A stretch of 64,000 nt of DNA, taken from the IMG/VR virus record IMGVR_UViG_3300009545_000018, positions 62,001-126,000 of that record; one strand, 5' to 3'. Position 1 is the first letter of the stretch. Each line of letters opens with the position of its first letter. The position numbers and the translations under genes are program-made. Positions 17,905 to 54,013 of the stretch are shown one piece after another. The notes under the pieces are model-generated. The model did no database searches and was not told the origin of the DNA. It worked only from the letters and a program-made list of their open reading frames with translations.

Positions 17905-18278
17905 TGATTATTGTTATAATACTGTTGATGCTTTTTTGCCTAGCGGGTTTTCAAATATATCAAAGTAAACCTAAGCCAACTAAACCATTAGTTAAATTTA
18001 AAGTTGATGATATAAGTGTCACTTTATTTTTTGAAAAGGGACAAGAATTACATAAAAAATTTGAAGGTAGAGTATATAAAACATGTTATCCAACAGCGCA
18101 CCGTGTGTTTTATTATTACGAAACTGTTAAAGCAGAAGATACTATGTTGCGCTGGTTACAGAAAAATAAAGAAAGCGGATTTGTTGCCATTGATGATTCT
18201 ACTCTATTACCAGTAGAACAAATTACTAATATTAATATAGATAAATCTTCCAGAGAAATTGAGTTAGAAGCATTATGA
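17904..18278 (+). CDS. membrane-anchored hypothetical protein
   Basis: N-terminal TM helix from ATG 17904. Confidence 0.55.
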   Translation: MIIVIILLMLFCLAGFQIYQSKPKPTKPLVKFKVDDISVTLFFEKGQELHKKFEGRVYKTCYPTAHRVFYYYETVKAEDTMLRWLQKNKESGFVAIDDSTLLPVEQITNINIDKSSREIELEAL

Positions 18279-18339
18279 AAATTTTGTTTATTATTATAAT
18301 TCTTTCTGCATTTTATTTTATATTGATGAAATCAGGAAA

Positions 18340-18963
18340 ATGGAATCAATGAAACAAAAAATCAGAACCATTCCTAATCTAGCTGATACTTCTCCTGCAC
18401 ATCTTTCTGCTATAGAAAAAGGATTAGAACATTTTGGATCTTGGCAGTATAATGTAGAAGATAGATTTAAATCTTTGGCTCAAGAAGAAATTAAAGCAGA
18501 ATTAAGGCGCACAGCTTTTCCATATGCTGTATTATTTGAACACCTCATTGGAGATTTTAATTTAGGAACTGGTATTAGAAATGCTAATGCCTTTAATGCC
18601 AGAGAAGTATTTTATCTCGGAAATAAAAAATGGGATAAGCGAGGAGCTACTGGAGTATATAATTATACTGATATCACCTTTCTATCTACCATAGATGAAG
18701 TAATAGAGTTGCAATCTAAATATACTTTTATTGGAGTAGATAATGTTCCTGGAAGTATTCCGCTAAATGAAATAGAGTATCAACCAAACACTCTTTTTGT
18801 TTTTGGAGAAGAGGGGGTAGGTTTAACTCCTGCGATGCAATCTTTTTGTAAAAACATTGTTTACATTAAACAATACGGATCAGTAAGATCTTTGAATGTT
18901 GGAACTGCTAGTGGTATTATAATGCATGATTTTGTCACCAGATTCAAACCACACAATTTATAA
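18340..18963 (+). CDS. SpoU/TrmH family RNA 2'-O-methyltransferase
   Basis: NLGTGIRNA, FGEEGVGL, RSLNVGTASGI SPOUT motifs. Confidence 0.9.
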   Translation: MESMKQKIRTIPNLADTSPAHLSAIEKGLEHFGSWQYNVEDRFKSLAQEEIKAELRRTAFPYAVLFEHLIGDFNLGTGIRNANAFNAREVFYLGNKKWDKRGATGVYNYTDITFLSTIDEVIELQSKYTFIGVDNVPGSIPLNEIEYQPNTLFVFGEEGVGLTPAMQSFCKNIVYIKQYGSVRSLNVGTASGIIMHDFVTRFKPHNL

Positions 18964-25087: not shown

Positions 25088-25699
25088 ATGCAAACATTAA
25101 AACTTATTCAACTTAATAATTGTCTAATTAATTATAAATTAGGAAAAGAAATTGGTTGTGGGGCTGATGGACAACTATTTGAACTTGCAGACTTTAAAGA
25201 TAAAGTAATTAAGATATCAGTAATATTTGATTTAGATTTTATTGGTAAAGATGTATTAAATAATAAATATGATGCATTTTCTAAAAACCTAAGTTATTTA
25301 CAACAACACAATACTATTTTTGCAAAAGTCTTTGATTTTCAAAAGATTGGAATCTTTAAAAGATTATTCAATAACATAGATCAATATTATTTATTACATT
25401 ATTGTGTAATGGAAAAATGCTTTAAGCTTACTGAAGATGAGAAAAAAGTATTTCATACAATTATTTCTCATGAAGATCGTGGAATAACAAAAAAATTTTC
25501 AACAGAAAAAATTGAAGAAATATTATTTGGATTATCGCGGGGGCTTGACTTTGATTCTAAAAAGATTAAATTGTTTTATGAATCAGTGATGACATCACCC
25601 ATTAAACATTTAGATTTGCATCCCAGAAATATTATGAAAGATATTAATGGGAATTTTAGATTAATAGATTTTGACCGAATTCAATTGGAGATTACATGA
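25088..25699 (+). CDS. protein kinase-like fold protein
   Basis: IGCGADG loop, HLDLHPRNIM, LIDFD. Confidence 0.75.
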   Translation: MQTLKLIQLNNCLINYKLGKEIGCGADGQLFELADFKDKVIKISVIFDLDFIGKDVLNNKYDAFSKNLSYLQQHNTIFAKVFDFQKIGIFKRLFNNIDQYYLLHYCVMEKCFKLTEDEKKVFHTIISHEDRGITKKFSTEKIEEILFGLSRGLDFDSKKIKLFYESVMTSPIKHLDLHPRNIMKDINGNFRLIDFDRIQLEIT

Positions 25700-26304
25700 A
25701 AGTTAATATTACATATTTAAAAAAACTAGTTGATCAATTAGAGACAGAGTTAAAGACGTCTGAAATGGATACTGGCACCGCACTCTCTAAAGAGGCTCAA
25801 GAAGCGCTAGAACATGAAAAACTAATTGCTTTGAATAAGGCGGGTGGCGTTTGTATGGGCATTTATCAAGAAGCTATAATGTTAGTCTCTGATATTCATA
25901 AAGTAGTAGCATCATCTTTTGGTCCTCCAAAATCATCAAAGGATGATGTTGTAGAGACTTTGTTGGGCTCCTTTAATAAATCATTTAAAGTTAATGGCGA
26001 TAAAAATAATTAGGAGATTAAAATGTATTCAGCATCAAAAAATGATATAAAGACTTTTGCACAAAAAATAGAGATCTTGGCTAAAGAGGTTTCTTCTACC
26101 ATTGATAATGGTGGCGATGTATTAGCGGTGGCTAACAAATTAGTAAGTAATAGTAATACATTCGTTTTTGTTTTGGGTGAAGTGTATGCCGTAGACCAGT
26201 TAGCAAAAAATACGCCTACACCACAAACAAATAAAATTTCTACGGTTAAAAATTCTAACTATCATAATGTTAGAGACAGTTTGGGACGCTTTAAAAAAGC
26301 ATAA
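25696..26304 (+). CDS. two hypothetical proteins (25696-26013, 26023-26304)
   Basis: ORF track, GGAG SD. Confidence 0.5.
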
Positions 26305-26765: not shown

Positions 26766-27317
26766 ATGAGTTCTTTATCTAAAATTTTAATTGTTAGTTT
26801 ACTGTTTTGTACGGCATCATGTACTTCTTGTTCTAAGAAAAATGTAACTGATCCACCAAAACCATTACCCACTTCTACTGAGACGGTAATAGTTCCTCCA
26901 GTACCCACTACACAATTAGTAGAATCATATCATGCAAGTGTAACTGTTCCATTACTCTTTCAAGACCAGCATAAAGATACTACTAATGATCCTAATTATA
27001 GGCTTTTTGCCAATATGAATGCTAATGAATTACTTTCATTAGATGCTGAGGCGTTTTCCTCTTCATATGAAGAATATGTATTAGAGGCTATAAGATTTAT
27101 AAAAGAAACTGGCGGCACCATACAATCAGCCAATTCTGTAACTCTTAATGGACAGAAAATGACATTGATAGAATCTTCTAGGGAAGGTATTGTGGCTTAT
27201 TTTTGGGTAACAACCAAAGATGGGTATGGTTATACTTTTACTTGTGGTGGAGAAGAAACATCTTCTACTATAGAAGATACCTGTGCGATGCTATCTACGA
27301 CTTTTCAAATTAAGTGA
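26766..27317 (+). CDS. putative lipoprotein
   Basis: signal peptide with Cys, Pro/Thr linker. Confidence 0.6.
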   Translation: MSSLSKILIVSLLFCTASCTSCSKKNVTDPPKPLPTSTETVIVPPVPTTQLVESYHASVTVPLLFQDQHKDTTNDPNYRLFANMNANELLSLDAEAFSSSYEEYVLEAIRFIKETGGTIQSANSVTLNGQKMTLIESSREGIVAYFWVTTKDGYGYTFTCGGEETSSTIEDTCAMLSTTFQIK

Positions 27318-37823: not shown

Positions 37824-39404
37824 TTGATTATGGTATCTAAAAATTTATTTAAGTCTACAGGTTCAGTTAAGAAAGCAATTAAACCAGTTAATGCTGTTAA
37901 TAATGCGGGCGGTGTGGCTTATACTATGGATGATAAGGCTGCCTTAGCGCAACTTGCCATGACTGGTTGTTTTAATGGAACTTATTATGTTGATGCTAAA
38001 GATCAACTTAATCAAGTTGTTGCTCTTGCTAATAAGCTTCCAGTAGAGTTCGTGGCAAAGTTAGCAGTATATGCTCGCCAAGAAGGTTTTATGAAGGATA
38101 TGCCTGCAGTATTAGCCGCAGTTGTTGCTAGCAAAGATACTGTTCTTTTATCCAAGATCTTTCCAAAGGTTATTGATAATCCAAAAATGGTTCGTAACTT
38201 TGTACAAGTTATTCGTTCTGGAGTAACAGGCAGAAAAAGTTTGGGAACCCGTCCTAAGAAATTAATTCAAAATTATTTGAATTCATTAACTGATGAGCAG
38301 TTGTTTAAGGCTGATGTAGGTAATAGCCCTTCATTACAAGATATTATTAAGTTAGCTCGTCCTAAGCCAGCTACTAAGAATCGCTCTGCTTTGTATGGTT
38401 ATTTGCTAGACAAGGAATATAATCCAGAAGACTTATGTTCCTTGGTTCAAGAGTTTGAATCTTTCAAAAAAGAAATGAGTTTGGATATTCCAAATGTTCC
38501 ATTTCAAATGTTAACAGCTTTGCCATTAACTGATAAGCATTGGAGCAAGATTGCTGAAAATGCAACCTGGAATCAAACCAGAATGAATTTAAATACTTTT
38601 GCTCGTCATAAGGTATTTGAAGATGCTACTACTTTAAACCTATTGGCTGAGAGATTAGCTGATTCTTCACAAATTGCAAAAGCAAAGGTATTCCCATATC
38701 AATTGTTTGCTGCATTTAAAAATGTAACTGCAGATGTTCCTAAGAAATTAACTAATGCTTTACAAAAAGCAGCGGATGCTTCGCTGGAAAATATTCCAGC
38801 TATTGAAGGTGAAGTTCACGTTTTAGTTGATGTATCAGGCAGCATGAGTAGCCCAGTCACTGGTAATCGTGGTTTTGTCACTAGTACTATGCGTTGTATT
38901 GATGTAGCAGCCTTAATGGCTTCTGCATTAATGCGCAAGAATGAAGATACTAAGGTATATCCATTTGATACTAGAGTTCATAATCATTCATTGAATCCAA
39001 TGGATTCAGTGATGACTAATGCGGCAACTCTTGCTGCATTTGGTGGTGGAGGAACTGATTGTGGTATGGCGTTAGAGAATTTAAATAAGCAGAAAGCCAA
39101 AGGCAATCTTGTTATTTATGTTTCTGATAATGAGTCTTGGGTAGATACTACTCCTAATTCCTATTATTCTCAAAGAGGTACTAAGGTAATGGAAGAGTGG
39201 AATAAATATAAAGCTCGTAATCCAAAAGCCAAATTGGTTTGTATTGATGTCACTCCTAATAAAACCACTCAAGCTCATAATAGAGAAGATATAATCAACA
39301 TTGCAGGATTTTCTGATCAAGTATTCGATGTTATTGCATTATTCCAAAAATTTGGCAATAATAAAGATCTTTGGGTTCAAACCATTGACTCAGTAGAAAT
39401 GTAA
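37824..39404 (+). CDS. rsr: Ro60 / TROVE-domain RNA-binding protein
   Basis: NNAGGVAY, LAQLAMTG.FNGTYY, YARQEGFMKDMP, MNLNTFARH, vWA DVSGSM, GGGGTDC, SDNESW. Confidence 0.93.
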   Translation: MIMVSKNLFKSTGSVKKAIKPVNAVNNAGGVAYTMDDKAALAQLAMTGCFNGTYYVDAKDQLNQVVALANKLPVEFVAKLAVYARQEGFMKDMPAVLAAVVASKDTVLLSKIFPKVIDNPKMVRNFVQVIRSGVTGRKSLGTRPKKLIQNYLNSLTDEQLFKADVGNSPSLQDIIKLARPKPATKNRSALYGYLLDKEYNPEDLCSLVQEFESFKKEMSLDIPNVPFQMLTALPLTDKHWSKIAENATWNQTRMNLNTFARHKVFEDATTLNLLAERLADSSQIAKAKVFPYQLFAAFKNVTADVPKKLTNALQKAADASLENIPAIEGEVHVLVDVSGSMSSPVTGNRGFVTSTMRCIDVAALMASALMRKNEDTKVYPFDTRVHNHSLNPMDSVMTNAATLAAFGGGGTDCGMALENLNKQKAKGNLVIYVSDNESWVDTTPNSYYSQRGTKVMEEWNKYKARNPKAKLVCIDVTPNKTTQAHNREDIINIAGFSDQVFDVIALFQKFGNNKDLWVQTIDSVEM

Positions 39405-39737: not shown

Positions 39738-40061
39738 ATGAAAACCATGTTGTTTGAAAAAACTATTAATTTAGTTAAAACTTTAAGAGAAACATTCACA
39801 ACTCGATGTTTACATAATCAAAAATTGCCCCTTTTTAGTTGGTTACATAGAAATTCTAGTAACTTTTCGAATGAAGAGTTTGAAGAGTTTTGGAAATTTT
39901 TAGTAATTTTATTTAAATATAAATATAAGGATATGAGCTTATTTTATGAAGCAGGAGAGTCTCCATTAGAAATGTTTGATTTTAGAGCAAACAAAGATCA
40001 AATCAATGACTTTATTTCTTTATTAGAAAATAAAATTAATAAATTGAAAGCTTTTATTTAA
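39738..40061 (+). CDS. small KAF-tag protein
   Basis: ends KLKAFI. Confidence 0.65.
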   Translation: MKTMLFEKTINLVKTLRETFTTRCLHNQKLPLFSWLHRNSSNFSNEEFEEFWKFLVILFKYKYKDMSLFYEAGESPLEMFDFRANKDQINDFISLLENKINKLKAFI

Positions 40062-40897
40062 TGATTAAAAGAAATGGTATTGAAATTAAGACTGCCCAAG
40101 CTCCAAATATAGTAGCAGCAAAAGATACTTTAAATATTCTTAAGAATAAAAATTATCTTGTTAAAGATAAGATCATAGATATTTCAGTGGCATTAGATAA
40201 TTCAATTAAAAATACTAAGTTATATTTGCCAGAAGATTGTTTTAATAGTAAAAATAATTTAATTAAACCTACTATAGAGGTAACAAATGAAACTACTACC
40301 TCTGCTGGGTTAAGATTATTAAATAGTGGTTTAGAAAATATTGTAGCTTTGAATTTTGCCTCAGCTAGAAATGTTGGGGGCGGATTTTTAGCGGGGGCAG
40401 TTGCCCAAGAAGAAGATTTGTGTCGGTGTTCTGGATTATATCTTTGTATTAAAAGCAAACCTATCTTTTATAATAAAAACATTTTATGTGATGATACTTT
40501 CTATACTAATCATATTATTTACTCACCCAATGTTCCTTTCTTTCGTAATGATAATCTAGATCTTTTAGAAGAGATATTCCACATTTCTATTATTTCTGCG
40601 CCCGCACCTAATGTTAGAGCTATGGAGAATGTTGATGAAGATAATTTAAGAAGCATATTAGAAATAAGGGCAGCTAGAATTTTACAGATTGCTATTGAAA
40701 ATAATCATGAAAATATTATCTTAGGAGCTTGGGGCTGTGGTGCTTTTGGTAATGATTCTAAAATGATAATTGAGGTTTTTCAAAAGGTATTAAATAGATA
40801 TCCTCATTTCAAACATGTTTGTTTTGCCGTCTTTGATAATAAAATAAATGCCCCTATTTTCAATGCATTTAAAGAAGCATTTGAAAATAATGAATGA
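40061..40897 (+). CDS. TIGR02452 / bacterial PARG-like ADP-ribose glycohydrolase
   Basis: LNFASARNVGGGF..GAVAQEEDLCRCS, LGAWGCGAFGND. Confidence 0.9.
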   Translation: MIKRNGIEIKTAQAPNIVAAKDTLNILKNKNYLVKDKIIDISVALDNSIKNTKLYLPEDCFNSKNNLIKPTIEVTNETTTSAGLRLLNSGLENIVALNFASARNVGGGFLAGAVAQEEDLCRCSGLYLCIKSKPIFYNKNILCDDTFYTNHIIYSPNVPFFRNDNLDLLEEIFHISIISAPAPNVRAMENVDEDNLRSILEIRAARILQIAIENNHENIILGAWGCGAFGNDSKMIIEVFQKVLNRYPHFKHVCFAVFDNKINAPIFNAFKEAFENNE

Positions 40898-41720: not shown

Positions 41721-41780
41721 ATTTATTTTAAATAACTGAAGATATATTTTTTCTTGCACTTCATTGGCAAGAGGATATTT

Positions 41781-42470
41781 ATGACAAAAGAAAATTATAC
41801 ATTAGTAGGCGTAGTAATAGATCGTAGCGGGTCTATGAGTTCATTAGTTTCTGATACAATTGGTGGATTTAATTCCCTTTTAAAAGAACAAAAAAACGAG
41901 CCTGGACAAGCTTCTGTTAGTTTATGTTTATTTAGTACAGATTATAAACTTACTCATTATGATGATATTAATCAGGTTGAAGAATTAAATGAAATTTCTT
42001 ATAGACCAGGTGGTGGTACTGCACTATTAGATGCTTTGGGTACTACAATTGATGAGATTGGAGTTAGATTAGCTGCTAAAAATGAAGAAGATAGACCATC
42101 TAAAGTAATTATTATAGTGATTACTGATGGTCAGGAAAATTCATCTAGAAAATATTCTAAAAATAAAATTAAAGAAATGATTTCTCACCAAGAAGAAAAA
42201 TATAATTGGTCATTTACTTTTATTGGCGCCAATATGGATGCAGTTAGTGCTGGCGACTCTATTGGGTTTTCTGCCAATAATTCTTATAATTATTCCGCTT
42301 CCGCTGGTGGGACTCAAAAAGTATATGCTACCATGAATAATTCTTTAAAAAGAGCTAGAGTTATGGGAAGTGGCATGAAATCTAATGAATCCTTATTTAC
42401 TCCAGAAGAGGCGCAAAGCTTATTAGATTCTGATAAAAAGGTGAAAGATAATGCAGAAAATAAGTCATAA
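41781..42470 (+). CDS. vWA-domain protein
   Basis: IDRSGSM MIDAS, GGTALLDA, ITDGQENSS. Confidence 0.88.
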   Translation: MTKENYTLVGVVIDRSGSMSSLVSDTIGGFNSLLKEQKNEPGQASVSLCLFSTDYKLTHYDDINQVEELNEISYRPGGGTALLDALGTTIDEIGVRLAAKNEEDRPSKVIIIVITDGQENSSRKYSKNKIKEMISHQEEKYNWSFTFIGANMDAVSAGDSIGFSANNSYNYSASAGGTQKVYATMNNSLKRARVMGSGMKSNESLFTPEEAQSLLDSDKKVKDNAENKS

Positions 42471-44167: not shown

Positions 44168-45170
44168 ATGGATCAAAAAGATTTAATAATACAAGAATTA
44201 CATAATATCATTTATAAATATGGCGTCAAAGCTTTAATGGAATTTGAGTCTAGGTTTCCGTGTGATCAATTAAGTTGTGTTAAAGTTCCATATAATCATA
44301 TTCCTAACAATTCAAAATTCATAGAGAGAAATTTTGGATATGGAATTTTTGTTTGGCAAGGAATTTCTTATAATGATGCATATTTATTTAGAATTCAATC
44401 ATATGAGAAATTTTGGATCGATTGGAATCAATTTAAACGTTATCTAGAATTATTAGCATTTACATGAAGACTAAAAAAGATATTGCAGATTTACTTCGAC
44501 CTATGCTTGAAAAATATGGAAGAGAATATCTTGTTAATTTTAACTTATTGATTAATAACGTTACTTGGGACGGCACTCTTAGTGAGTATGTTTCTATTCC
44601 TTTTAATAACATAAGTGAACACAGAGTTAATTGTAGTTCTTTTTTAGAGCTTAAACAACATATTAATAATTTAGAGATGAAAAGAACTTGGGGAAATTCG
44701 TGGACATATATTGAAGTTCCATCTGATTGTAATGATTTTTTTCATCTTAGAATTGATGGTGTTGAAAATTTTTACATTAAGTGGGAAAAATATCAAAGAT
44801 ACTTAAATTTGAAAGCTTTTATATAATGACAACAGAAGAAGATTTTAGAAAAAGTTTATCTTGTATTATTGAAAAATTTGGTCCAGAACATTTTAGTGTT
44901 ATTTTAACAATTGCACAAAATTCAAGCTTTTATTTTAAAAGTAAAAATATGTTATTAATACCATTTAAATCTAATTCTTCGTTTAAAAGAGTAAATGTTA
45001 AATATGAGGAGTGTGCCGCTGTTGTATGGAAAAATTATGCTAATCATAAATATTTTCCATTTCCTCCAGATTGTGATGATTGGTATTGTATGCTTGGTGA
45101 TTCTTTTGAAAGTATACTAACTCTGTATAATGTTGGTAGCAAAATGATAAAAATGAAAGCTTTTATATAA
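44168..45170 (+). CDS. array of three KAF-tag proteins (44168-44467, 44464-44826, 44826-45170)
   Basis: ends ELLAFT, NLKAFI, KMKAFI; mutually similar N-termini. Confidence 0.7.
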
Positions 45171-45664
45171 TGACAATTGGAATATTTGCTGGCAGTTTTG
45201 ATCCTATTACTTTAGGGCATTTAGATATTATAAATCGTAGTTTAACTTTTTTAGATAAATTAATAGTGTTAATAGCAGTTAACCCAAATAAGAAAACCAC
45301 TTTCTCTTTAAATAAAAGAAAATCTTTAATTATAGAGAGTCTTTTCGAAACATCAACGAGATCTGCAGATGTTATAGTGGATTCATATGATGGATTGGTT
45401 GTTAATTATGCTAAGTTACATGGAGCTTCAGTTTTGATTAGAGGTGTTCGTACCTCAACAGATTTTGAATATGAAACTAATTTAGCTAATGGTAATAGAT
45501 TATTAGCACCAGAGATTGAAACTGTCTTTATACCAACTCGTCCAGAATTATCTGTAGTATCTTCTTCCATGGCTAAAGAAATTAATAAATGGAATGGTGA
45601 TGTATCTAAATTAGTTACAGTTAAAGTTAAAAATGCTCTGAATGAAATTGTGAGTTTAAAATGA
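45170..45664 (+). CDS. coaD: phosphopantetheine adenylyltransferase
   Basis: AGSFDPITLGHLDII, IRGVR..DFEYE, VSSSMAKE. Confidence 0.93.
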   Translation: MTIGIFAGSFDPITLGHLDIINRSLTFLDKLIVLIAVNPNKKTTFSLNKRKSLIIESLFETSTRSADVIVDSYDGLVVNYAKLHGASVLIRGVRTSTDFEYETNLANGNRLLAPEIETVFIPTRPELSVVSSSMAKEINKWNGDVSKLVTVKVKNALNEIVSLK

Positions 45665-45935: not shown

Positions 45936-45963
45936 TTGACAACAAGTAAGTCGGAGTTATAAT
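45936..45963 (+). promoter_or_regulatory. sigma70-like promoter
   Basis: TTGACA-N16-TATAAT. Confidence 0.75.
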
Positions 45964-46212: not shown

Positions 46213-46302
46213 GGGGAAGTAGCTCAGCCGGCCAGAGCGCTTTACTGTTTTATAAAACGAATAGTGAAGAGGTCGATGGTTCAAATCCATCCTTCCCCAC
46301 CA
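46213..46302 (+). tRNA. tRNA with 20-nt anticodon loop, identity uncertain
   Basis: GGGGAAG/CTTCCCC+ACCA, canonical D and T arms; anticodon arm extended to about 11 bp. Confidence 0.75.
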
Positions 46303-46374
46303 TGAATCAAATGCAGATAAGATTACATTTAACAGTTAATTAAAAAAGCATCTTATCAATAATTTGTTGATTCA
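46303..46374 (+). ncRNA. scaffold-family ncRNA copy A
   Basis: TGAATCAA/TTGATTCA, GATAAGAT/ATCTTATC, ATGC and TACATT motifs. Confidence 0.7.
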
Positions 46375-46380
46375 TTTAAT

Positions 46381-46653: not shown

Positions 46654-47622
46654 TTGAACTGTTATATATTCTGTATGATTGTCATACAGAAACGATCTTT
46701 TTCTTTAGAAGAGTTAAGAGAAATATTCAAAAGTTCATTGTCAAAGCAAGATGTTGCCATAAAGTTAGGTTTTACTTATAGTAATGGGAAAGTTTATAAA
46801 AAAATTGAGAAACTTTCTATTGAATATAATTTATCGACGGATCATTTTGATCCATTTTTAAGTCAAAGATTAAATACAAAATTTCCTAAAATAGAAAAAG
46901 AATGTCCTATATGCGGTAATTTATTTGAAACTAAACATGGACATCGTGATGAAAAAATTACTTGCTCAATATCATGCTCTAATACTTATTTTGCTCCTAG
47001 TAAACACACTGAATTATCAAATTTAAAAAGATCGTTAAAGCTTTTAAAAAATTCAAAAAATGAAACTGTCAATATAATAAAAGTTCGTAAAAAACGTAAA
47101 AAGAATTTTAAATTAAAAGCTGTTGTTTTATATATTAAGTCTTGTGAATTTTGTGATTATGATTTTGAAACTTATAATAAAAATAAAAGATTTTGCAATA
47201 TATCATGTCAAATCAAACATAATTGGGAAGATCCCAATTATCGTATTAATATTATAAATAAAGCTAATGAAAGAGTTACAAATGGAACCCATAATGGGTG
47301 GTCATCAAGATCAAAACTAAAACCTTCTTATGCTGAACAATATGTTATCAATCTTTTAGATGAGTTAAAAATAACAAATATTACTCGAGAATACAAAATT
47401 AACAAATGGTTTATTGATTTTGCTGATATAGATAGAAAATTAGCTTTAGAAATAGATGGTAAACAACATGAATTACCAGAACGTAAGGCTTCGGATCAAG
47501 TTAAAGATCAATATTTAAAAGATAATGGTTGGACCATTTTAAGAATAAAATGGAAAAAGATAACAGCAGAATTTAGAGAAGAATTAATAAAAGTTTTGCA
47601 AAATTTCACAAGGATCATATAA
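46654..47622 (+). CDS. homing endonuclease, Vsr/DUF559-like
   Basis: CPIC and CxxC Zn motifs, IDFAD..LALEIDGKQH..D..L..GWTILRIKW. Confidence 0.82.
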   Translation: MNCYIFCMIVIQKRSFSLEELREIFKSSLSKQDVAIKLGFTYSNGKVYKKIEKLSIEYNLSTDHFDPFLSQRLNTKFPKIEKECPICGNLFETKHGHRDEKITCSISCSNTYFAPSKHTELSNLKRSLKLLKNSKNETVNIIKVRKKRKKNFKLKAVVLYIKSCEFCDYDFETYNKNKRFCNISCQIKHNWEDPNYRINIINKANERVTNGTHNGWSSRSKLKPSYAEQYVINLLDELKITNITREYKINKWFIDFADIDRKLALEIDGKQHELPERKASDQVKDQYLKDNGWTILRIKWKKITAEFREELIKVLQNFTRII

Positions 47623-48402: not shown

Positions 48403-48484
48403 TGCGGGGTAGAGGAGTATGGTTATCTCACCAGCCTCATAAGCTGTGGTATACGTGGGTTCAAATCCCACCCTTCCGCAACCA
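48403..48484 (+). tRNA. tRNA-Met(CAT)
   Basis: CT-CAT-AA loop, TTCAAAT T-loop, ACCA; slightly irregular acceptor junction. Confidence 0.8.
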
Positions 48485-48552
48485 CTGGATGGTGGTTACC
48501 AAATCCGCAAAGGGGTATAGAAATATACTCGGAGGATTGAATCCACTATTAT

Positions 48553-48687
48553 GCAATTCTGGTATAATGGCATTACTGACTCTAAAAAGAGTATCACTTA
48601 CAAAGAAACCTGTGAGGCTACCAGGAAATTATTGTAAGAATAACGCCTTGCCTGGCGTAGATGTTGGTTCGATTCCAACGGATTGCA
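48553..48687 (+). ncRNA. tRNA-like RNA with multi-hairpin central insertion
   Basis: GCAATTC/GGATTGC, D arm, GTTGG-TTCGATT-CCAAC; about 80 nt of hairpins replace anticodon/variable arm. Confidence 0.6.
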
Positions 48688-48691
48688 TTAA

Positions 48692-48782
48692 GTGATGTTT
48701 GATAAGTAATCACGCCAGAAACATGATTTATCATGTTTGCCCTGATCAGCCTGGTAGTTAGGTGCAAATCCTAAGCATCACA
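48692..48782 (+). ncRNA. tRNA-like RNA with branched anticodon arm
   Basis: GTGATGT/GCATCAC, TTAGG-TGCAAAT-CCTAA, AAACATGA/TCATGTTT hairpin inside CCAG/CTGG. Confidence 0.55.
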
Positions 48783-48798
48783 ACAACTGAGTTTATAT

Positions 48799-49079
48799 GC
48801 CCGAATCCCTATATTGGTTAAGACATATAGACAATAGTCCGGTCTTAGGCTACCATTAAGGAGTAATCCTTTTAGAGACCACTGCTTCGGTGTGGGCAAA
48901 CCCGGCATTTAGGTGGAAAGCCTAATAAATTTTGCTTGATTAAATAGTTTCTTGCTACAAGATCAACGGTGTACAACGAATCTTGCTATTTAATTGGGAA
49001 GTCTTATAATTGTGGACTTGGTGAAACAGGTATAAGGCGAATTACGCTCGATATTGGATAAAACTAACATTGGGCGCCA
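48799..49079 (+). ncRNA. 281-nt structured RNA ending in GCCA
   Basis: GCCCGA/TTGGGC terminal stem plus GCCA; GTAA, cTTCGg, GCAA tetraloops. Confidence 0.55.
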
Positions 49080-49143
49080 TGAATCAAATCCGTATAGGAA
49101 TACATTCGGAAAAAATAAATCTTATACACTACTTGTTGATTCA
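49080..49143 (+). ncRNA. scaffold-family ncRNA copy B
   Basis: TGAATCAA/TTGATTCA, GTATAGGA/TCTTATAC, TACATT. Confidence 0.7.
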
Positions 49144-49148
49144 ATTAT

Positions 49149-49225
49149 TGTCGATTAGCTCATCGTTAGAGCGCCCGGCCGTAAGAGTCTGGAGGTACTA
49201 GGTTCAATTCCTAGATCGACAACCA
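49149..49225 (+). tRNA. tRNA with irregular anticodon arm (Thr-CGT-like, uncertain)
   Basis: TGTCGAT/ATCGACA+ACCA, good D and T arms; loop region CCGTAAGAGT. Confidence 0.65.
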
Positions 49226-49337
49226 TGTAACAAATGCCAGGGCAGCATTACATTTATTGGAATTAAATCCGATGAGGCTCGACTCCTCTTAAGGTCCGGT
49301 GACAGGCAAAACATGTTGCTCATTATTTGTTGTTACA
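49226..49337 (+). ncRNA. scaffold-family ncRNA copy C
   Basis: TGTAACAA/TTGTTACA, GGCAGCAT/ATGTTGCT, TACATT; cargo includes GAGG-CTCGACT-CCTC. Confidence 0.7.
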
Positions 49338-49465
49338 AATTTTTGACAGTATATCTAAACTGTATAGTGTGAGTTATGCGCAAGGGATAATTACCTAAGT
49401 AGCAACTATAGGTTTGCTAGTTAATCCTACACATGAATCAGAGTTAACCTGAAAACTAGCACAAT

Positions 49466-49539: not shown

Positions 49540-49591
49540 TGCCCACTAACTTAATTACATAAAAGTAAGGTTGTCGGGGCGCCAAATTTAC

Positions 49592-49666
49592 GTTCTGGTC
49601 GTCTAAATAATTAGGACATCTCCGCGAAAGGGGAAGATATTGGAGAATTACCAATCTGGAGCGCCA
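49592..49666 (+). ncRNA. non-canonical tRNA-like RNA
   Basis: GTTCTGG/CTGGAGC+GCCA, T-loop AGAATTA, anticodon loop GCGAAA. Confidence 0.6.
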
Positions 49667-49753
49667 TAAGTTAGTGGCTGGAAATCATTTAAGCGAGTTC
49701 AAATGCAATAACAGTCCGCCTAATTGCTCGTATATTAGGTAACTTAATTTTAT

Positions 49754-49830
49754 GCCCCTGTCGTCGTAAAAAGTCAGGACATCTCCAGTAATAGGAGAAG
49801 ATGTTGGAGAATTGCCAACTGGGGGTGCCA
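49754..49830 (+). ncRNA. non-canonical tRNA-like RNA, paralog of 49592-49666
   Basis: GCCCCTG/TGGGGGT+GCCA, TCTCC/GGAGA, T-loop AGAATTG. Confidence 0.6.
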
Positions 49831-50132
49831 AAGGCAAGTAAGGACCAGGAAGCCTTATGAGCTGCTGGTTTTTCATATAGGGAACTAGCCTGGTTAGTCC
49901 TATATGAGAACCAACCAATGTCTTTAAATAAAGAAATTTATATAAGGACACCATGATTAATTTGTGCAGCTGACTTATATTGGATTTCGCGATCTGATAT
50001 ATGAGTGCTGGAAAATACGGAAAGTTGGAAAACTGATGCACACCGTATAAGTTAACTAAATCACTAACTGTTATTATCTACGCGAATAGATAAAAACAAA
50101 GTAATTAGTTAATTATAATTAATCAAAAACTT

Positions 50133-50226
50133 TAGCAAATGCAGTAAGGATTACATTGGTTATAGTCAATCGAAAGATTGATGGTGGGTATCGATTCCCA
50201 CAGTATCTTTACAAAACTTGTTGCTA
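50133..50226 (+). ncRNA. scaffold-family ncRNA copy D
   Basis: TAGCAA/TTGCTA, GTAAGGAT/ATCTTTAC, TACATT; cargo GNRA hairpin plus GTGGG-TATCGATT-CCCAC. Confidence 0.7.
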
Positions 50227-50230
50227 TTAT

Positions 50231-50367
50231 TCCGAGGTACGTCTAATGGTAAGACACGCGGCTGTGGGAACTATAGGTTAATAATAAGTCCCGTTCGATT
50301 CGGGCAGTTCCAAGAATAACCGCGCGGTGGTAACACTTTGTAGGTTCGAGTCCTACCCTCGGAGCCA
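50231..50367 (+). tRNA. tRNA-Asn(GTT)-like gene with 51-nt insertion in the anticodon
   Basis: TCCGAGG/CCTCGGA+GCCA; CGCGG-CTGT[50266-50316]TAA-CCGCG. Confidence 0.75.
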
Positions 50368-50392: not shown

Positions 50393-50554
50393 ATGCAAGT
50401 TCAAATACATCTTTACAATCAATCCAATCCTATTGTGTTGGAACATGTAACTAATGCTTATCAAAAAGGTGATTTTTATTGTGTTATGTTTGCTAGTAAA
50501 CTAGTTCAAAAGTTTCCAATTCAACATATATTTAGAATAATAGAAACTCCTTAA
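50393..50554 (+). CDS. small hypothetical protein (53 aa)
   Basis: AAGGA SD, MQVQIHLYNQSNPI... Confidence 0.55.
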   Translation: MQVQIHLYNQSNPIVLEHVTNAYQKGDFYCVMFASKLVQKFPIQHIFRIIETP

Positions 50555-50557
50555 TGT

Positions 50558-51330
50558 ATGATTTCAAAATTAACAATCAAATCTTATGGAGTGACAGTAA
50601 CTCTTCCCAGTGAAATTCTAATTTTAGAAGATTGTATCTGGGCTAAAACTGGTGAACATTTAGCTTTAGGAAAAGACAAAAATATTATGGGTAATGATTG
50701 TTTTATTGTCCTTAGAAAAAACGGAGTTGTTATTTCTGGACCTTCTCCTTTAATTCATTCGGTTGGAGCAAATAGTTTAATTTATCAAGAGTGTTCGGTA
50801 GAAAAATATTATAAAATGAAAGCATTTTTGTAATGATCAAATATGTTGATGATAACGGTAAAGAAAAAATTTTACCTGAAAAAATAGTTATACTAAAATG
50901 TCCTGATAGTTGGCTTATTGAGCCTGGAGATTATATAGAATTTATTCATACATATTATCTTCATATGAGGATCTCCAGCTTTGAAATCAAAGTTTTAAAA
51001 GGATATCATAAGAATAAAATATTTGATTTACTCTTTAGTCATTTATCTAAGATTGAATATGTAAGCATAGAAAAGTTTGAAAAACTAAAGGCGTTTGTTT
51101 AAATGGAAACCAAGTGGATTTTAGTAACACAACAAAACTCTGTTTACTATAATAAAATCTTAGAATTAAAAGAAGGTTGGACATCAACCATTTATAATGG
51201 GACTATTGTTTGGTTTATTGAGTCAGTAAATGGTCAAGTTAGACATTATCCGGATTGGTTTGAGTTAAACGATTTGCCAACACATACAGTAGTAACAAAG
51301 GATGCCCTTAATTTATTAGCCTTTTTATAA
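50558..51330 (+). CDS. array of three KAF-tag proteins (50558-50833, 50833-51102, 51103-51330)
   Basis: ends KMKAFL, KLKAFV, NLLAFL. Confidence 0.7.
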
Positions 51331-51336
51331 AAAACT

Positions 51337-51579
51337 TTAGATGAATGCCGCAATGGAATACATATACAACCGATAGCTGAATGTCGCAAGACATTCAATA
51401 TCTCCGATTTCATAAAAGAGATATGAACCAACCTAAAGGAATTCCTATAAGGATAAACTATGTGACTGACAAACTTGAAGCCAGTTAAAGCTCAAGTCCT
51501 CTATGGTATTATTAGGATAAGATATACTGTGCTATTGGATAAAATTAATCGCACTTTCTATTGCATTCTTGTCATCTAA
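51337..51579 (+). ncRNA. scaffold-family ncRNA copy G (large cargo)
   Basis: TTAGATGA/TCATCTAA, ATGCC, GCAATGGAA/TTCTATTGC, TACAT, CTTG. Confidence 0.62.
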
Positions 51580-51591
51580 TTAACTTTTCAT

Positions 51592-51720
51592 TTAAATGAA
51601 TGCCGATTCGGGAATACATTAAACACAAAGATACTGCAGCATGTGCCAGGCTAATCCACATGTACCTTAGGAGTACTCAGGGTAAAGTGTACCGACTTCT
51701 CAATCACCTTTGTCATTTAA
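51592..51720 (+). ncRNA. scaffold-family ncRNA copy H
   Basis: TTAAATGA/TCATTTAA, ATGCC, GATTCGGGAA/TTCTCAATC (imperfect), TACATT, TTTG. Confidence 0.62.
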
Positions 51721-51721
51721 C

Positions 51722-52962
51722 ATGAATTACTTAAAACACACATTAGATAACGGCACAGTATTAGAAATACCAGAAGAATTTATGGTATTAGATAATTTAC
51801 CATCAGAAGATCTACATTACAAAGTAGAATTAATTCTTGATTTTATTAGAGGCTGGGTATTTAAAATAACCCATATAAATGGTTTAGAACTAACTCAATA
51901 TAAAGAAGATCCAACATGGATTTGTTATTTTAGTCCAGAAAAGATTTTTAATAAAAAAATTATACCATGTTCACTTGAAAAATTTAACAATATGAAAGCA
52001 TTTTTATAATGTCAAAAGAAGAAAAACCATTATCACCTTATGAGATAAGAAGATTAGGTCATTGCAAAGAAACAGAGCAGTGTGTTGATGATCTATATTG
52101 TAATTGTCCTTGTTTACCTTGTTCTAAGCAAGATTGTTTTAGACCAGGATGTAAATGTGGTAGAACTCATCCATATAAAAATTAATGTACTTACATATCC
52201 ATGATAAAGATGTTCCATCTTCTATTTTAGTTTTAGAAGACTCAAAAACTCACACCATTGAAAAGAATTCTCATTTTGTTTTTAGAAAAATTAAGTATAA
52301 TGAATATTGTGTTGATTTTTTTAATGGTAAAGATAATCGTTATTCTTATGCAAGATATTCAGAAGATGATTTATATCGTATGTTTTTTGATGGCAAATTA
52401 AAATATAAAGAATTTTCTTTAGCCCAGTTTAATAAAATAAAAGCATTTTTATGAAATATTATATTATTGAGGATACAGTAGTTCCAAGTGAGTTCATTAT
52501 AATTCATGATACAGATTTATGTAGAATTTATAATATTTATCCAGAGTTTAATAGAAATATTTATACTCATAAGAATTTTTTTGATTATATAAGCTACGAT
52601 CTTGATTATAATTTTATTTCGATTGCTACCATGCCAGGCAGTCAATTACTAAGTTATATTGATAATAATAAGTTATTTCCAATAGAAAAGTTTAATAGTT
52701 TAAAGGCTTTCTTATGAAATATATTCAAACTGCTAAATATAATTATCCAGAAGAAATATTTGTAACACAAAGTTTCTTTAGACACGAGTGGACTAATAAA
52801 CACTTGGTATTAAAACAATATAATGAATATGTATTAAGTGTATTTTTAATAAATGGGGAAGAGCCCTCACATCCAATGGCTATTACCAATAATTTCATTC
52901 ATGAGGCTAATTTTTTAGAAATGTCTTTAGAAAGATATTTAAAGATTAAATCTTTCTTATAA
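51722..52962 (+). CDS. four KAF-tag proteins (51722-52009, 52185-52454, 52451-52717, 52714-52962) and a Cys-rich 58-aa ORF (52009-52185)
   Basis: ends NMKAFL, KIKAFL, SLKAFL, KIKSFL; overlapping start/stops. Confidence 0.7.
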
Positions 52963-53476: not shown

Positions 53477-53516
53477 ATTTATCAAGCAATAATATTAAGT
53501 TATTATTGCTTTGACT

Positions 53517-53586
53517 ATGGACAAATTAGATAAGGATTACATTTTATTGGAAAAACAAACATCTTTGTCAACTACTTGTTGTCCAT
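53517..53586 (+). ncRNA. scaffold-family ncRNA copy E
   Basis: ATGGACAA/TTGTCCAT, GATAAGGAT/ATCTTTGTC, TACATT. Confidence 0.7.
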
Positions 53587-53589
53587 TAT

Positions 53590-53862: not shown

Positions 53863-54013
53863 TGAAAACAAATGCCCGTACAAGGATTACATTCATTATA
53901 GGAACGTGAAGAAAGTTCGATTCTTTCCGCAGCGACCAAACTAAAAACAATTGCTGCGTGGTGTATTGGTTAACACACGAAAAAAACATCTTTGTCAATT
54001 TTTGTTGTTTTCA
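53863..54013 (+). ncRNA. Y RNA-like ncRNA: scaffold copy F with circularly permuted tRNA domain
   Basis: TGAAAACAA/TTGTTTTCA, ACAAGGAT/ATCTTTGT; inside: T arm, CGCAGCG-ACCA, linker, TGCTGCG, D arm. Confidence 0.78.

What the first reader, a model, noticed from the sequence alone, without database searches (positions are those of the whole stretch)
51337..51720. Two large-cargo scaffold RNAs in tandem inside a KAF-tag gene array
Seen: the 380-nt gap between KAF-tag ORFs is filled almost exactly by two scaffold copies (243 and 129 nt). They share the variant TGA-ATGCC..GGAA-TACAT and TTG-TCA, and their cargo is unrelated to tRNA (e.g. TGAATGTC-GCAA-GACATTCA hairpin). This shows the scaffold is not confined to tRNA-derived cargo. 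Inference: cargos might be aptamer-like decoys or antisense guides.
Basis: partly seen in the sequence, partly recalled or inferred. Interest (0 to 1): 0.6.

Follow-up and report, generated by a model that had tools for sequence, protein, structure and literature searches.

The report
Phage Y RNAs beside a Ro60 gene
The two RNAs filling this gene gap belong to a conserved family of Y-RNA-like small RNAs that travels with a phage-encoded Ro60 protein in giant phages, so they are new, oddly equipped members of a known RNA class and not a new kind of element.

Summary
Window 51337-51579 (243 nt) and 51592-51720 (129 nt) are two tandem copies of a structured RNA element that has eight copies in this 448-kb phage genome, all on the + strand between 46.3 and 54.0 kb. 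The shared frame is a closing stem P1, an unpaired AUGC, a second stem P2, UACAU, a variable insert, P2', N3-6 YUUG, and P1'. A covariance model built only from other phages recovers both copies (E 4e-9 and 9e-11). Both stems covary strongly.

The "scaffold" is most likely the Ro60-binding stem of Y RNAs. A Ro60/Rsr orthologue lies 12 kb upstream on the same strand. The element occurs in at least 26 Ro60-encoding giant-phage contigs, always on the Ro60 strand where orientation is known. It often lies within 1 kb of the gene, including in loci without tRNAs. Several members carry the permuted tRNA-like module (V, T, AS, D) that defines YrlA.

The inserts of the two copies studied here are not tRNA-like. 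They have no relatives and no antisense targets, so the decoy and guide ideas are unsupported. Ro60 binding and expression are untested. Verdict: a new variant of a known kind.

The parts
51337..51579 (+). Copy D, Y-RNA-like, 243 nt. P1 51337-51344 / 51572-51579; J1 AUGCC 51345-51349; P2 51350-51358 / 51556-51564; UACAU 51359-51363; 192-nt insert 51364-51555; J2 AUUCUUG 51565-51571.
   Evidence: Sequence. MFE fold recovers P1 and P2 with a multibranch insert, z -3.66. R1 30.9 bits, D not in its training set. R2 39.9 bits, E 4e-9.
51592..51720 (+). Copy E, Y-RNA-like, 129 nt. P1 51592-51599 / 51713-51720; J1 AUGCC 51600-51604; P2 51605-51614 (C51609 bulged) / 51697-51705; UACAU 51615-51619; 77-nt insert 51620-51696; J2 ACCUUUG 51706-51712.
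   Evidence: Sequence. Fold recovers P1 and P2, overall z -0.03. R2, built without this genome, gives 45.7 bits, E 9e-11.
51379..51398 (+).
   Evidence: The exact 20-23-mer also occurs in two unrelated metagenome contigs, about the number expected by chance.
46302..46375 (+). Copy A, minimal insert (21 nt). It starts right after the CCA of the tRNA at 46213-46302 and ends 7 nt before tRNA-Tyr.
   Evidence: (E 2e-10).
49079..49144 (+). Copy B, minimal insert (14 nt). It is preceded by ...GCGCCA and followed by tRNA-Leu.
49225..49338 (+). Copy H. Its insert has a hairpin plus a T-arm-like hairpin. It starts right after the CCA of tRNA-Leu.
50130..50229 (+). Copy C. Its insert has a hairpin plus a T-arm-like hairpin. 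It shares the 5' flank AAAAACUUUAG with D.
53516..53587 (+). Copy F, minimal insert (18 nt).
53863..54013 (+). Copy G. Its insert has a T arm, a long stem-loop and a D-arm-like hairpin, which is the YrlA-type permuted tRNA-like module. It follows tRNA-Met.
   Evidence: An orthologous copy exists in relative L119 at 18128-18354.
37824..39404 (+). Ro60/Rsr orthologue (526 aa; TROVE ring plus Ro60-type vWA domain with a DVSGSMS MIDAS-like motif); the proposed protein partner.
   Evidence: Pfam vWA_Ro60 1.4e-15 and TROVE 7e-8, both above cut-off. PDB: phiLo Ro60 9kop 2e-14, D. radiodurans Rsr 2nvo 5e-12 over residues 25-507. It is the only TROVE locus in the genome.
45936..45963 (+). Perfect sigma-70-type promoter match (TTGACA-16-TATAAT) upstream of the tRNA/Y-RNA region; a possible start of the polycistronic precursor.
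   Evidence: consensus match only.

Best explanation
D and E are two phage-encoded Y-RNA-like (Yrl) small RNAs. Its parts are P1 ending in ..YGA, an unpaired AUGC opposite N3-6 YUUG, P2 ending in GGRA, and then UACAU. This frame is proposed to be the binding site for the phage's own Ro60 protein (window 37824-39404). The variable insert would correspond to the effector module of Y RNAs. In known systems that module tethers Ro60 to a partner such as polynucleotide phosphorylase, or mimics tRNA.

Shown here: the RNAs form a conserved, covarying family that co-occurs with Ro60 genes on the same strand in giant phages. Some members carry the YrlA-type permuted tRNA module.

Inferred: Ro60 binds the frame. 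The RNAs are cut from long tRNA/mRNA precursors, using tRNA-processing enzymes where tRNAs abut them; for D and E, which have no flanking tRNA, nucleases would trim back to the Ro60-protected stem. The non-tRNA inserts of D and E would recruit different, unknown partners.
For: (1) A Ro60 orthologue lies 12 kb upstream on the same strand.
(2) R1 finds 68 elements (60 outside the window) in the window plus 14 of the 22 other loci searched, which were 20 Ro60 loci found through the protein plus two cultured-phage loci. All are on the Ro60 strand. Nine loci have a copy within 1 kb of the Ro60 gene, including L125 and L128, which have no tRNA genes.
(3) Ascertainment without Ro60: a DNA-pattern scan of IMG/VR gave 11 new model-positive records, and 9 of them encode a Ro60 homologue (43-65% identity). 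None of 5 model-negative control records does.
(4) Specificity: 0 hits in 910 kb of unrelated viral DNA and none elsewhere in the own genome.
(5) Structure: 94.5% of cells are paired, all 15 pairs show double changes, and the covariation score is 0.89 against 0.09-0.12 for slid controls.
(6) The invariant letters are the unpaired ones, AU(GC), UAC(AU) and U(U)G, as expected for a protein-contact site.
(7) Matches to published Y RNA features (PMC4201824, PMC12135203): 5'/3' stem-bulge-stem; the motif GNCGAAN0-1G is exact in GC-rich relatives (..GCCGA|AUG); YUAY follows the second stem (UUAC/CUAC); the V, T, AS, D module order in L140 12338-12474, L125 8685-8819 and window copy G equals that of a mycobacteriophage YrlA; co-transcription with tRNAs is known for D. 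radiodurans Yrn2.
(8) Tandem arrays like D-E (12-nt spacer) are typical of the family: 7 in L125, 9 in L126, at least 15 in L129.
Against: No binding or expression data exist. The only run holding this DNA is the source rhizosphere metagenome.

R1 does not detect the experimentally bound Yrl1/Yrl2 of Thermus phage phiLo, the classical YrlA of a mycobacteriophage, or anything near the Ro60 gene of Myxococcus phage Mx1 (50% identical Ro60). Homology to characterised Y RNAs therefore rests on architecture and short motifs.

In D and E the CGAA motif reads UGAA.

In this genome the elements lie 7-15 kb from Ro60, beyond the 4 kb typical of bacteria.

One apparently complete 52-kb phage (G007) has a strong copy but no Ro60. 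Seven distinct Ro60 loci had no hit within 10 kb.

The inserts of D and E have no homologues, so their structures are single-sequence predictions, and E folds no better than shuffles.
Confidence: 0.75

Rival explanations
1. They are punctuation or processing spacers of the phage tRNA operon: structured substrates for RNase P, Z, E or III that define tRNA ends, with no link to Ro60.
For: Many copies abut tRNAs. 12 of 68 start within 10 nt of an upstream tRNA 3' end, often directly after CCA, and 19 of 68 end within 10 nt of a downstream tRNA.
Against: D and E have no flanking tRNA. L125 (7 copies) and L128 (3 copies) have no tRNA genes at all, yet the copies sit next to Ro60. tRNA-rich Ro60-free viral DNA was not enriched. 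Invariant unpaired motifs and the YrlA-type module are not needed for punctuation.
Confidence: 0.09
2. The frame binds a different co-inherited protein, for example the nearby vWA protein, a tRNA-modifying or CCA-adding enzyme, or a host factor. The link to Ro60 would be only shared ancestry within one clade of giant phages.
For: All Ro60-positive records are related giant phages (Ro60 43-68% identical), so co-occurrence is partly phylogenetic. G007 has a copy without Ro60. A vWA protein lies at 41754-42470, and Mx1 also has one near its tRNAs.
Against: Copies lie immediately beside the Ro60 gene in nine loci of widely differing GC content. The motif and module match Y RNAs specifically.
Confidence: 0.09
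3. They are self-cleaving ribozymes or other catalytic RNAs that release tRNA 3' ends, by analogy with HDV-like theta ribozymes next to phage tRNAs.
For: Several copies begin exactly after CCA.
Against: No Rfam ribozyme family matches even at E up to 5. The topology is a simple nested stem-loop-stem without the pseudoknots of HDV-like ribozymes. Minimal copies are only ~62 nt, with 14-nt loops. D and E follow an ORF, not a tRNA.
Confidence: 0.03
4. They are cis-regulatory leader or attenuator structures for the downstream KAF-type gene, or simply an untranslated spacer.
For: E ends 1 nt before the ATG at 51722, which has no Shine-Dalgarno sequence, so P1 of E could affect its translation.
Against: The same element occurs 66 more times in non-equivalent contexts: between tRNAs, in tandem arrays and next to Ro60. 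No promoter or terminator signal lies in the gap.
Confidence: 0.03
5. They are a retron-like or mobile (MITE-like) element.
For: Terminal inverted repeats (P1) with a G close to the stem; multiple copies.
Against: The genome has no reverse transcriptase. The P1 and P2 sequences differ between copies while keeping their pairing, which points to selection on RNA structure and not copy-paste spread. There are no target-site duplications.
Confidence: 0.01

Closest known systems
YrlA-type bacterial and phage Y RNAs (Chen et al. 2014, RNA 20:1715, PMC4201824)
   Same: Encoded on the Ro60 strand. The 5' and 3' ends pair. The GNCGAAN0-1G motif lies near the 5' end (exact in GC-rich relatives). YUAY follows the second stem. 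Several family members carry a permuted tRNA-like module in the order V, T, AS, D. More than one Y RNA per genome, some without the tRNA module. Co-transcription with tRNAs.
   Different: In this family the GNCGA part is base-paired inside P1, and the 3' strand (YUUG) is also conserved, which is more like Deinococcus and metazoan Y RNAs. UACAU is invariant. R1 does not hit a mycobacteriophage YrlA. Copy numbers reach 8 to 15 or more per phage. D and E carry large non-tRNA inserts. In this genome the distance to Ro60 is 7-15 kb.
Yrl1/Yrl2 of Thermus phage phiLo with phiRo60 and host PNPase (NAR 2025, PMC12135203; PDB 9KOP, 9L5Y)
   Same: Phage-encoded Ro60 (closest solved structure to P0001) with stem-bulge-stem RNAs bearing a CGAA motif near the gene. 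This is experimental precedent that phage Ro60 binds such RNAs and forms a complex with host PNPase.
   Different: There is no model-level similarity. phiLo has two RNAs directly upstream of Ro60 and no tRNA-array context.
Metazoan and Deinococcus Y RNAs (Ro60-binding bulged helix GGUCCGA / UUGACC)
   Same: Conserved lower stem with both strands conserved, a UUG on the 3' strand, and a modular loop that tethers effectors.
   Different: The pairing register differs: covariation places the A of ..CGA opposite the U after UUG. The internal loop is larger and asymmetric.
Stable non-tRNA RNAs inside phage tRNA clusters (T4 species 1 and 2 RNAs; from my own knowledge, not tested)
   Same: Small structured RNAs co-transcribed and processed with phage tRNAs.
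   Different: T4 has no Ro60, and no sequence comparison was made here.

Membership tests
Y RNA / Yrl (Ro60-associated ncRNA) | Encoded near a Ro60/TROVE gene on the same strand | tested here: met
   Ro60 lies at 37824-39404 (+) and D/E 12 kb downstream (+). In relatives, copies lie within 1 kb of Ro60 in 9 loci, and all 68 hits are on the Ro60 strand. In this genome the distance exceeds the 4 kb typical of bacteria.
Y RNA / Yrl (Ro60-associated ncRNA) | 5' and 3' ends pair into a stem interrupted by a conserved bulge or internal loop (stem-bulge-stem) | tested here: met
   P1 and P2 are recovered by MFE folding and supported by covariation (15 of 15 pairs). The loop letters AUGC and YUUG are invariant.
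Y RNA / Yrl (Ro60-associated ncRNA) | CGAA / GNCGAAN0-1G motif near the 5' end | tested here: inconclusive
   The motif is exact in GC-rich relatives (GCCGAAUG). D reads GAUGAAUG and E reads AAUGAAUG, so CGAA becomes UGAA. Column counts at the C and G positions are C 47 / U 19 and G 52 / A 16.
Y RNA / Yrl (Ro60-associated ncRNA) | Physically bound and stabilised by Ro60 | not testable with these tools
   Needs EMSA or immunoprecipitation. The complex tool takes proteins only.
Y RNA / Yrl (Ro60-associated ncRNA) | Expressed as a discrete small RNA | not testable with these tools
   Only the source DNA metagenome holds the sequence.
Y RNA / Yrl (Ro60-associated ncRNA) | Detectable sequence/structure homology to characterised Y RNAs | tested here: not met
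   R1 gives no hit on the mycobacteriophage YrlA, phiLo Yrl1/2 or the Mx1 Ro60 locus. Rfam has no model that detects the mycobacteriophage YrlA either, so Rfam's silence is uninformative.
YrlA subfamily (tRNA-mimicking Y RNA) | Permuted tRNA-like module: V, T arm, acceptor-like stem-loop, D arm | tested here: not met
   Not met for D and E: no T or D arm, and no tRNA call. Met for other family members: window copy G, L140 12338-12474 and L125 8685-8819. D and E are therefore non-YrlA Y RNAs of the same frame, like YrlB or Yrn2 in bacteria.
Ro60/Rsr protein (for P0001) | TROVE HEAT-repeat ring plus C-terminal vWA domain with MIDAS motif | tested here: met
   Pfam TROVE 32.5 bits (cut-off 23) and vWA_Ro60 58 bits (cut-off 27.7). 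Near full-length match to Rsr 2nvo. DVSGSMS is present.
Self-cleaving ribozymes next to phage tRNAs (HDV-like/theta, hammerhead, twister, hatchet) | Match to the family's covariance model and topology | tested here: not met
   No Rfam ribozyme hit at E up to 5. The topology is nested and has no pseudoknot.
Retron ncRNA | Adjacent reverse transcriptase | tested here: not met
   No RVT_1 match in the whole genome.

The most novel reading that the evidence does not exclude
A clade of soil giant phages carries Ro60 together with a fast-evolving library of up to 15 or more Y-RNA adaptors. These share one Ro60-binding frame but have diversified heads: tRNA mimics, minimal hairpins, and lineage-specific large modules such as D and E. 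Each adaptor would direct Ro60, and a host exonuclease such as PNPase, to a different RNA or protein partner, or would sponge host tRNA-directed defence nucleases. Under this reading D and E are phage-specific protein-binding modules.
Probability: 0.25. Interest if true: 0.75.

Novelty: new variant of a known kind. Interest (0 to 1): 0.55.

Why it matters
Y RNAs are still poorly understood, and only a handful have been studied in bacteria and one phage. This family offers many natural variants of one Ro60-binding frame with exchangeable heads. It gives clear sequence signatures to mutate (AUGC, UACAU, YUUG). Its organisation in arrays interleaved with tRNAs suggests that giant phages invest heavily in Ro60-based RNA surveillance or counter-defence. 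It also explains structured 'gaps' in phage tRNA regions that annotation pipelines leave blank, because Rfam did not detect a classical phage YrlA either.

Tried and rejected
- Rfam at gathering and at E up to 5: only tRNAs. A positive control showed that Rfam also misses a classical phage YrlA.
- Nucleotide search of cultured phages: only tRNA matches.
- First IMG/VR pattern (AAATGC..GGAWTACAT): 115 loci, all chance matches, with 0 model hits in the 100 loci searched.
- My hand-written descriptor was too permissive on its own (26-34 hits in shuffled genomes). I used it only to seed alignments.
- Reverse transcriptase and RtcB: absent.
- Orthologues of the D and E inserts: none in the closest relatives G001, G002, G009, G013.
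- Antisense targets in the phage genome: none longer than 14 nt.
- Metagenome scan with the D hairpin 20-mer: the source contig plus two unrelated contigs, one beside a 23S rRNA end. I read these as chance or convergent GNRA hairpins.
- RNA-seq evidence: none available.
- Weak model hits at 25670-25738 and 27010-27071: they lack AUGC or P2, and the first lies in coding sequence. Rejected.
- The 41-aa ORF at 51600-51725 and the 61-aa minus-strand ORF at 51246-51431: no support. The ATG of the first comes from the conserved UGAAUGCC motif.
- Pfam and PHROGs for the KAF-type proteins: nothing.

Full report
WHAT IS THERE. The window is bases 62001-126000 of a 447,763-bp IMG/VR virus contig with 31% G+C, recovered from a rhizosphere metagenome. 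Between the stop of one small ORF (51330) and the ATG of the next (51722) lie two tandem elements. Each has:
- an 8-bp closing stem P1 (UUAGAUGA/UCAUCUAA in D, UUAAAUGA/UCAUUUAA in E, which includes a compensatory G-C to A-U change);
- an unpaired AUGCC;
- a 9-bp stem P2 ending in GGAA;
- the pentamer UACAU;
- an insert of 192 nt (D) or 77 nt (E);
- the return strand of P2;
- a 7-nt single strand ending in YUUG;
- the return strand of P1.
Unconstrained MFE folding recovers P1 and P2 in both copies.

THE FAMILY. Six more copies lie on the same strand between 46.3 and 54.0 kb. I built covariance model R1 from 12 short-insert copies, three of them from the window. With filters off it finds exactly the eight copies in the window, including D, which was not in its training set. 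It finds nothing else in the whole genome. I then built a second model, R2, from 67 elements of 18 other phage contigs, with no sequence from this genome. R2 recovers all eight copies, with E-values from 6e-12 to 3e-7; D scores 4e-9 and E scores 9e-11. One caveat applies: the members of R2 were selected by R1. R1 gave 0 hits in 910 kb of unrelated viral contigs. On the 68-member alignment, 94.5% of cells form pairs. All 15 modelled pairs show double compensatory changes. The covariation score is 0.89, against 0.09-0.12 when the partner columns are slid; that alignment is model-fitted, which favours the structure somewhat. The invariant letters are the unpaired ones: A and U of AUGC (68/68), UAC of UACAU (68/68), and U and G of YUUG (68/68). 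That pattern is what a protein-recognition surface would show.

THE KEY CONTEXT. A TROVE search of the genome hit one open frame, window 37824-39404 on the + strand. Its 526-aa product matches Pfam vWA_Ro60 and TROVE above their cut-offs. It also matches the solved Ro60 of Thermus phage phiLo, D. radiodurans Rsr and vertebrate RO60. The phage therefore encodes a Ro60 orthologue 7-15 kb upstream of the eight elements, on the same strand.

CO-OCCURRENCE. The Ro60 protein retrieved 23 giant-phage loci from IMG/VR, 43-68% identical. I searched the window plus 22 other loci with R1: 20 of these Ro60 loci and two loci from cultured phages (Mx1 and a mycobacteriophage). R1 found 68 elements, 60 of them outside the window, in the window and 14 of the other loci. 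Every element is on the Ro60 strand. In nine loci a copy lies within 1 kb of the Ro60 gene. L125 has seven tandem copies directly upstream of it, and L128 has three directly downstream. Neither locus has a single tRNA gene.

To avoid ascertainment through Ro60, I scanned IMG/VR with a DNA pattern from the frame and filtered the matches with R1. This gave 11 new positive records. Nine of them encode a Ro60 homologue. The two exceptions are a 28-kb fragment and one 52-kb contig rated complete. None of five model-negative control records has Ro60. Two other pattern-matched records that had no model hit in the stretch held also encode Ro60. The association is strong, but all positive phages are related, so part of it is shared ancestry.

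COMPARISON WITH KNOWN Y RNAs. Chen et al. 2014 (PMC4201824) define bacterial and phage YrlA RNAs by five features: proximity and co-orientation with Ro60; a GNCGAAN0-1G motif near the 5' end; a YUAY shortly after; a permuted tRNA-like domain (V, T, AS, D); and more than one Y RNA per genome, some lacking the tRNA domain. D. radiodurans Yrn2 is made on one precursor with a tRNA. The phiLo study (PMC12135203) shows a phage Ro60 binding two stem-bulge-stem RNAs that carry a CGAA motif, and forming a complex with host PNPase.

The present family fits these features as follows:
- In GC-rich relatives the end of P1 plus the loop reads ..GCCGA|AUGC, which is GNCGAANG.
- YUAC follows P2.
- The inserts of L140 12338-12474, L125 8685-8819 and window copy G contain a hairpin, a T arm, a long stem-loop and a D arm. 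A YrlA-like RNA that I located upstream of Ro60 in mycobacteriophage ScoobyDoobyDoo has them in the same order.

There are also differences:
- The GNCGA segment is paired within P1, and covariation supports that register.
- The 3' strand is conserved as well.
- In this AT-rich phage CGAA has become CAAA or UGAA.
- R1 detects neither the mycobacteriophage YrlA, nor phiLo Yrl1/2, nor anything near the Ro60 gene of Myxococcus phage Mx1.
I therefore file the family as Y-RNA-like by architecture, motif and genomic linkage. Demonstrable homology was tested and not met.

THE INSERTS OF D AND E. Neither insert is tRNA-like. The insert of D folds into a multibranch domain closed by an 8-bp helix, with a GCAA-capped hairpin and several others, and it is more stable than shuffles (z -3.66). 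The insert of E shows a 7-bp hairpin, a weaker second hairpin that is kept only in part in the centroid structure, and, by eye, a 4-bp hairpin with a 7-nt loop; it is no more stable than shuffles. I found no homologue of either insert in the closest relatives (Ro60 65-68% identical) or in JGI metagenomes beyond the source contig. Nor is there any complementarity longer than 14 nt to the phage genome.

Large inserts are rare but not unique in the family: 5 of 68 elements are 195 nt or longer. Tandem pairs with spacers of up to 50 nt are common. It also fits the known modularity of Y RNAs. The antisense-guide idea finds no support.

MECHANISM (largely inferred). The region is probably transcribed as long precursors; a perfect sigma-70-type promoter match lies at 45936-45963. 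Where tRNAs abut the elements, RNase P and tRNA 3'-end processing would define their ends: 12 elements start within 10 nt of a tRNA 3' end and 19 end within 10 nt of a tRNA 5' end. D and E sit between protein genes, so other nucleases would have to trim them back to the Ro60-protected stem. Ro60 would bind the P1/loop/P2 frame. The insert would then recruit a partner, with PNPase as the precedent, or mimic tRNA.

RIVALS. Pure tRNA-operon punctuation is contradicted by the tRNA-free Ro60 loci and by D and E themselves. A different co-inherited protein partner cannot be excluded without biochemistry. The ribozyme, leader and mobile-element readings have little support.

NOVELTY. Phage Ro60 with Y-like RNAs is known from mycobacteriophages, CcrColossus, phage G and phiLo. 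TROVE proteins have been noted in a subset of jumbo phages (PMC7824862). My literature searches found no description of three things:
- this frame signature (AUGC, UACAU, YUUG);
- arrays of 8 to 15 or more copies interleaved with tRNAs;
- large non-tRNA modules such as D and E.
The library is incomplete, and two Wolin-lab reviews could not be read.

LIMITS. There are no expression or binding data. The insert structures rest on single sequences. E-values from the shortened calibration are rough. The co-occurrence was not corrected for phylogeny.

Noticed in passing
window 50558-52962 (+): Seven tandem paralogues of ~75-95 aa share an N-terminal (V/L)P(S/E)E(I/F)hhL motif and a C-terminal EKFxK(L/I/M)KAFL tail (the 'KAF-tag' family). 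Most are translationally coupled (ATGA / TAAATG overlaps). No Pfam or PHROG match. A 58-aa Cys-rich ORF (52009-52185) sits among them.
   Followed up: partly
window 51713-51724: Copy E ends 1 nt before the ATG (51722) of the next KAF-type gene, which has no Shine-Dalgarno sequence. Processing at the 3' edge of E would leave a nearly leaderless mRNA, or P1 of E could occlude the start.
   Followed up: no
window 49591-49667 and ~49754-49831 (+): Two related (~74-85% identical) cloverleaf-like RNAs end in ..GCGCCA / ..GUGCCA with atypical arms. Neither ARAGORN nor Rfam calls them. A third CCA-ending hairpin element precedes copy B (to 49079). The ORF-free stretches 48480-49080 and 49540-50130 are G+C-rich and probably hold further unannotated RNAs.
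   Followed up: partly
window 46213-46302 and 50231-50364 (+): Two tRNA genes carry insertions: 16 nt in the anticodon loop (ARAGORN reports anticodon 'gttt'), and about 60 nt in the second (Rfam tRNA 39.3 bits, missed by ARAGORN). These may be introns or non-standard tRNAs.
   Followed up: no
window 40061-40897, 41754-42470, 45170-45664 (+): Between Ro60 and the tRNA/Y-RNA region lie a microbial-type PARG (poly-ADP-ribose glycohydrolase, E 4e-44), a vWA-domain protein and a cytidylyltransferase-like (NMNAT-type) protein. The genome has no RtcB.
   Followed up: partly
window 46654-47622 (+): A 322-aa ORF with a DUF559 / REase_MTES_1575 endonuclease domain and zinc-finger-like Cys pairs is inserted in the tRNA region; likely a homing-type endonuclease.
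   Followed up: no
window 50393-50554 (+): A 53-aa ORF matches phrog_10299 (unknown function, E 4e-19). It is the only small ORF here with a known phage family.
   Followed up: no
L127, L130, L137, L138, L139 (Ro60 loci of other giant phages): These Ro60-encoding contigs carry suppressor-type tRNAs (anticodons CUA or UUA) near Ro60 and gave no R1 hit within 10 kb. They may use stop-codon recoding and a different Y RNA type.
   Followed up: no
L205 3332-3401 (IMGVR_UViG_3300033070_000722, 52 kb, rated complete): A strong family member (53.6 bits) sits in a phage with no detectable Ro60 gene. It may rely on a host Ro60, or it may be an exception to the linkage.
   Followed up: partly
L291 332-354 and L292 2856-2878: The 23-nt GCAA hairpin of copy D occurs exactly in two unrelated metagenome contigs, one next to the 5' end of a 23S rRNA gene and one followed by a second GCAA-capped hairpin upstream of a gene. 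I read this as chance or convergence.
   Followed up: partly
L129 (IMGVR_UViG_3300034782_000062), L126, L125: Some relatives carry very large Y-like arrays: at least 15 copies in L129, mixed with about 30 tRNAs and a tmRNA, 9 in L126, and 7 in L125 directly upstream of Ro60. Inserts reach 272 nt.
   Followed up: partly
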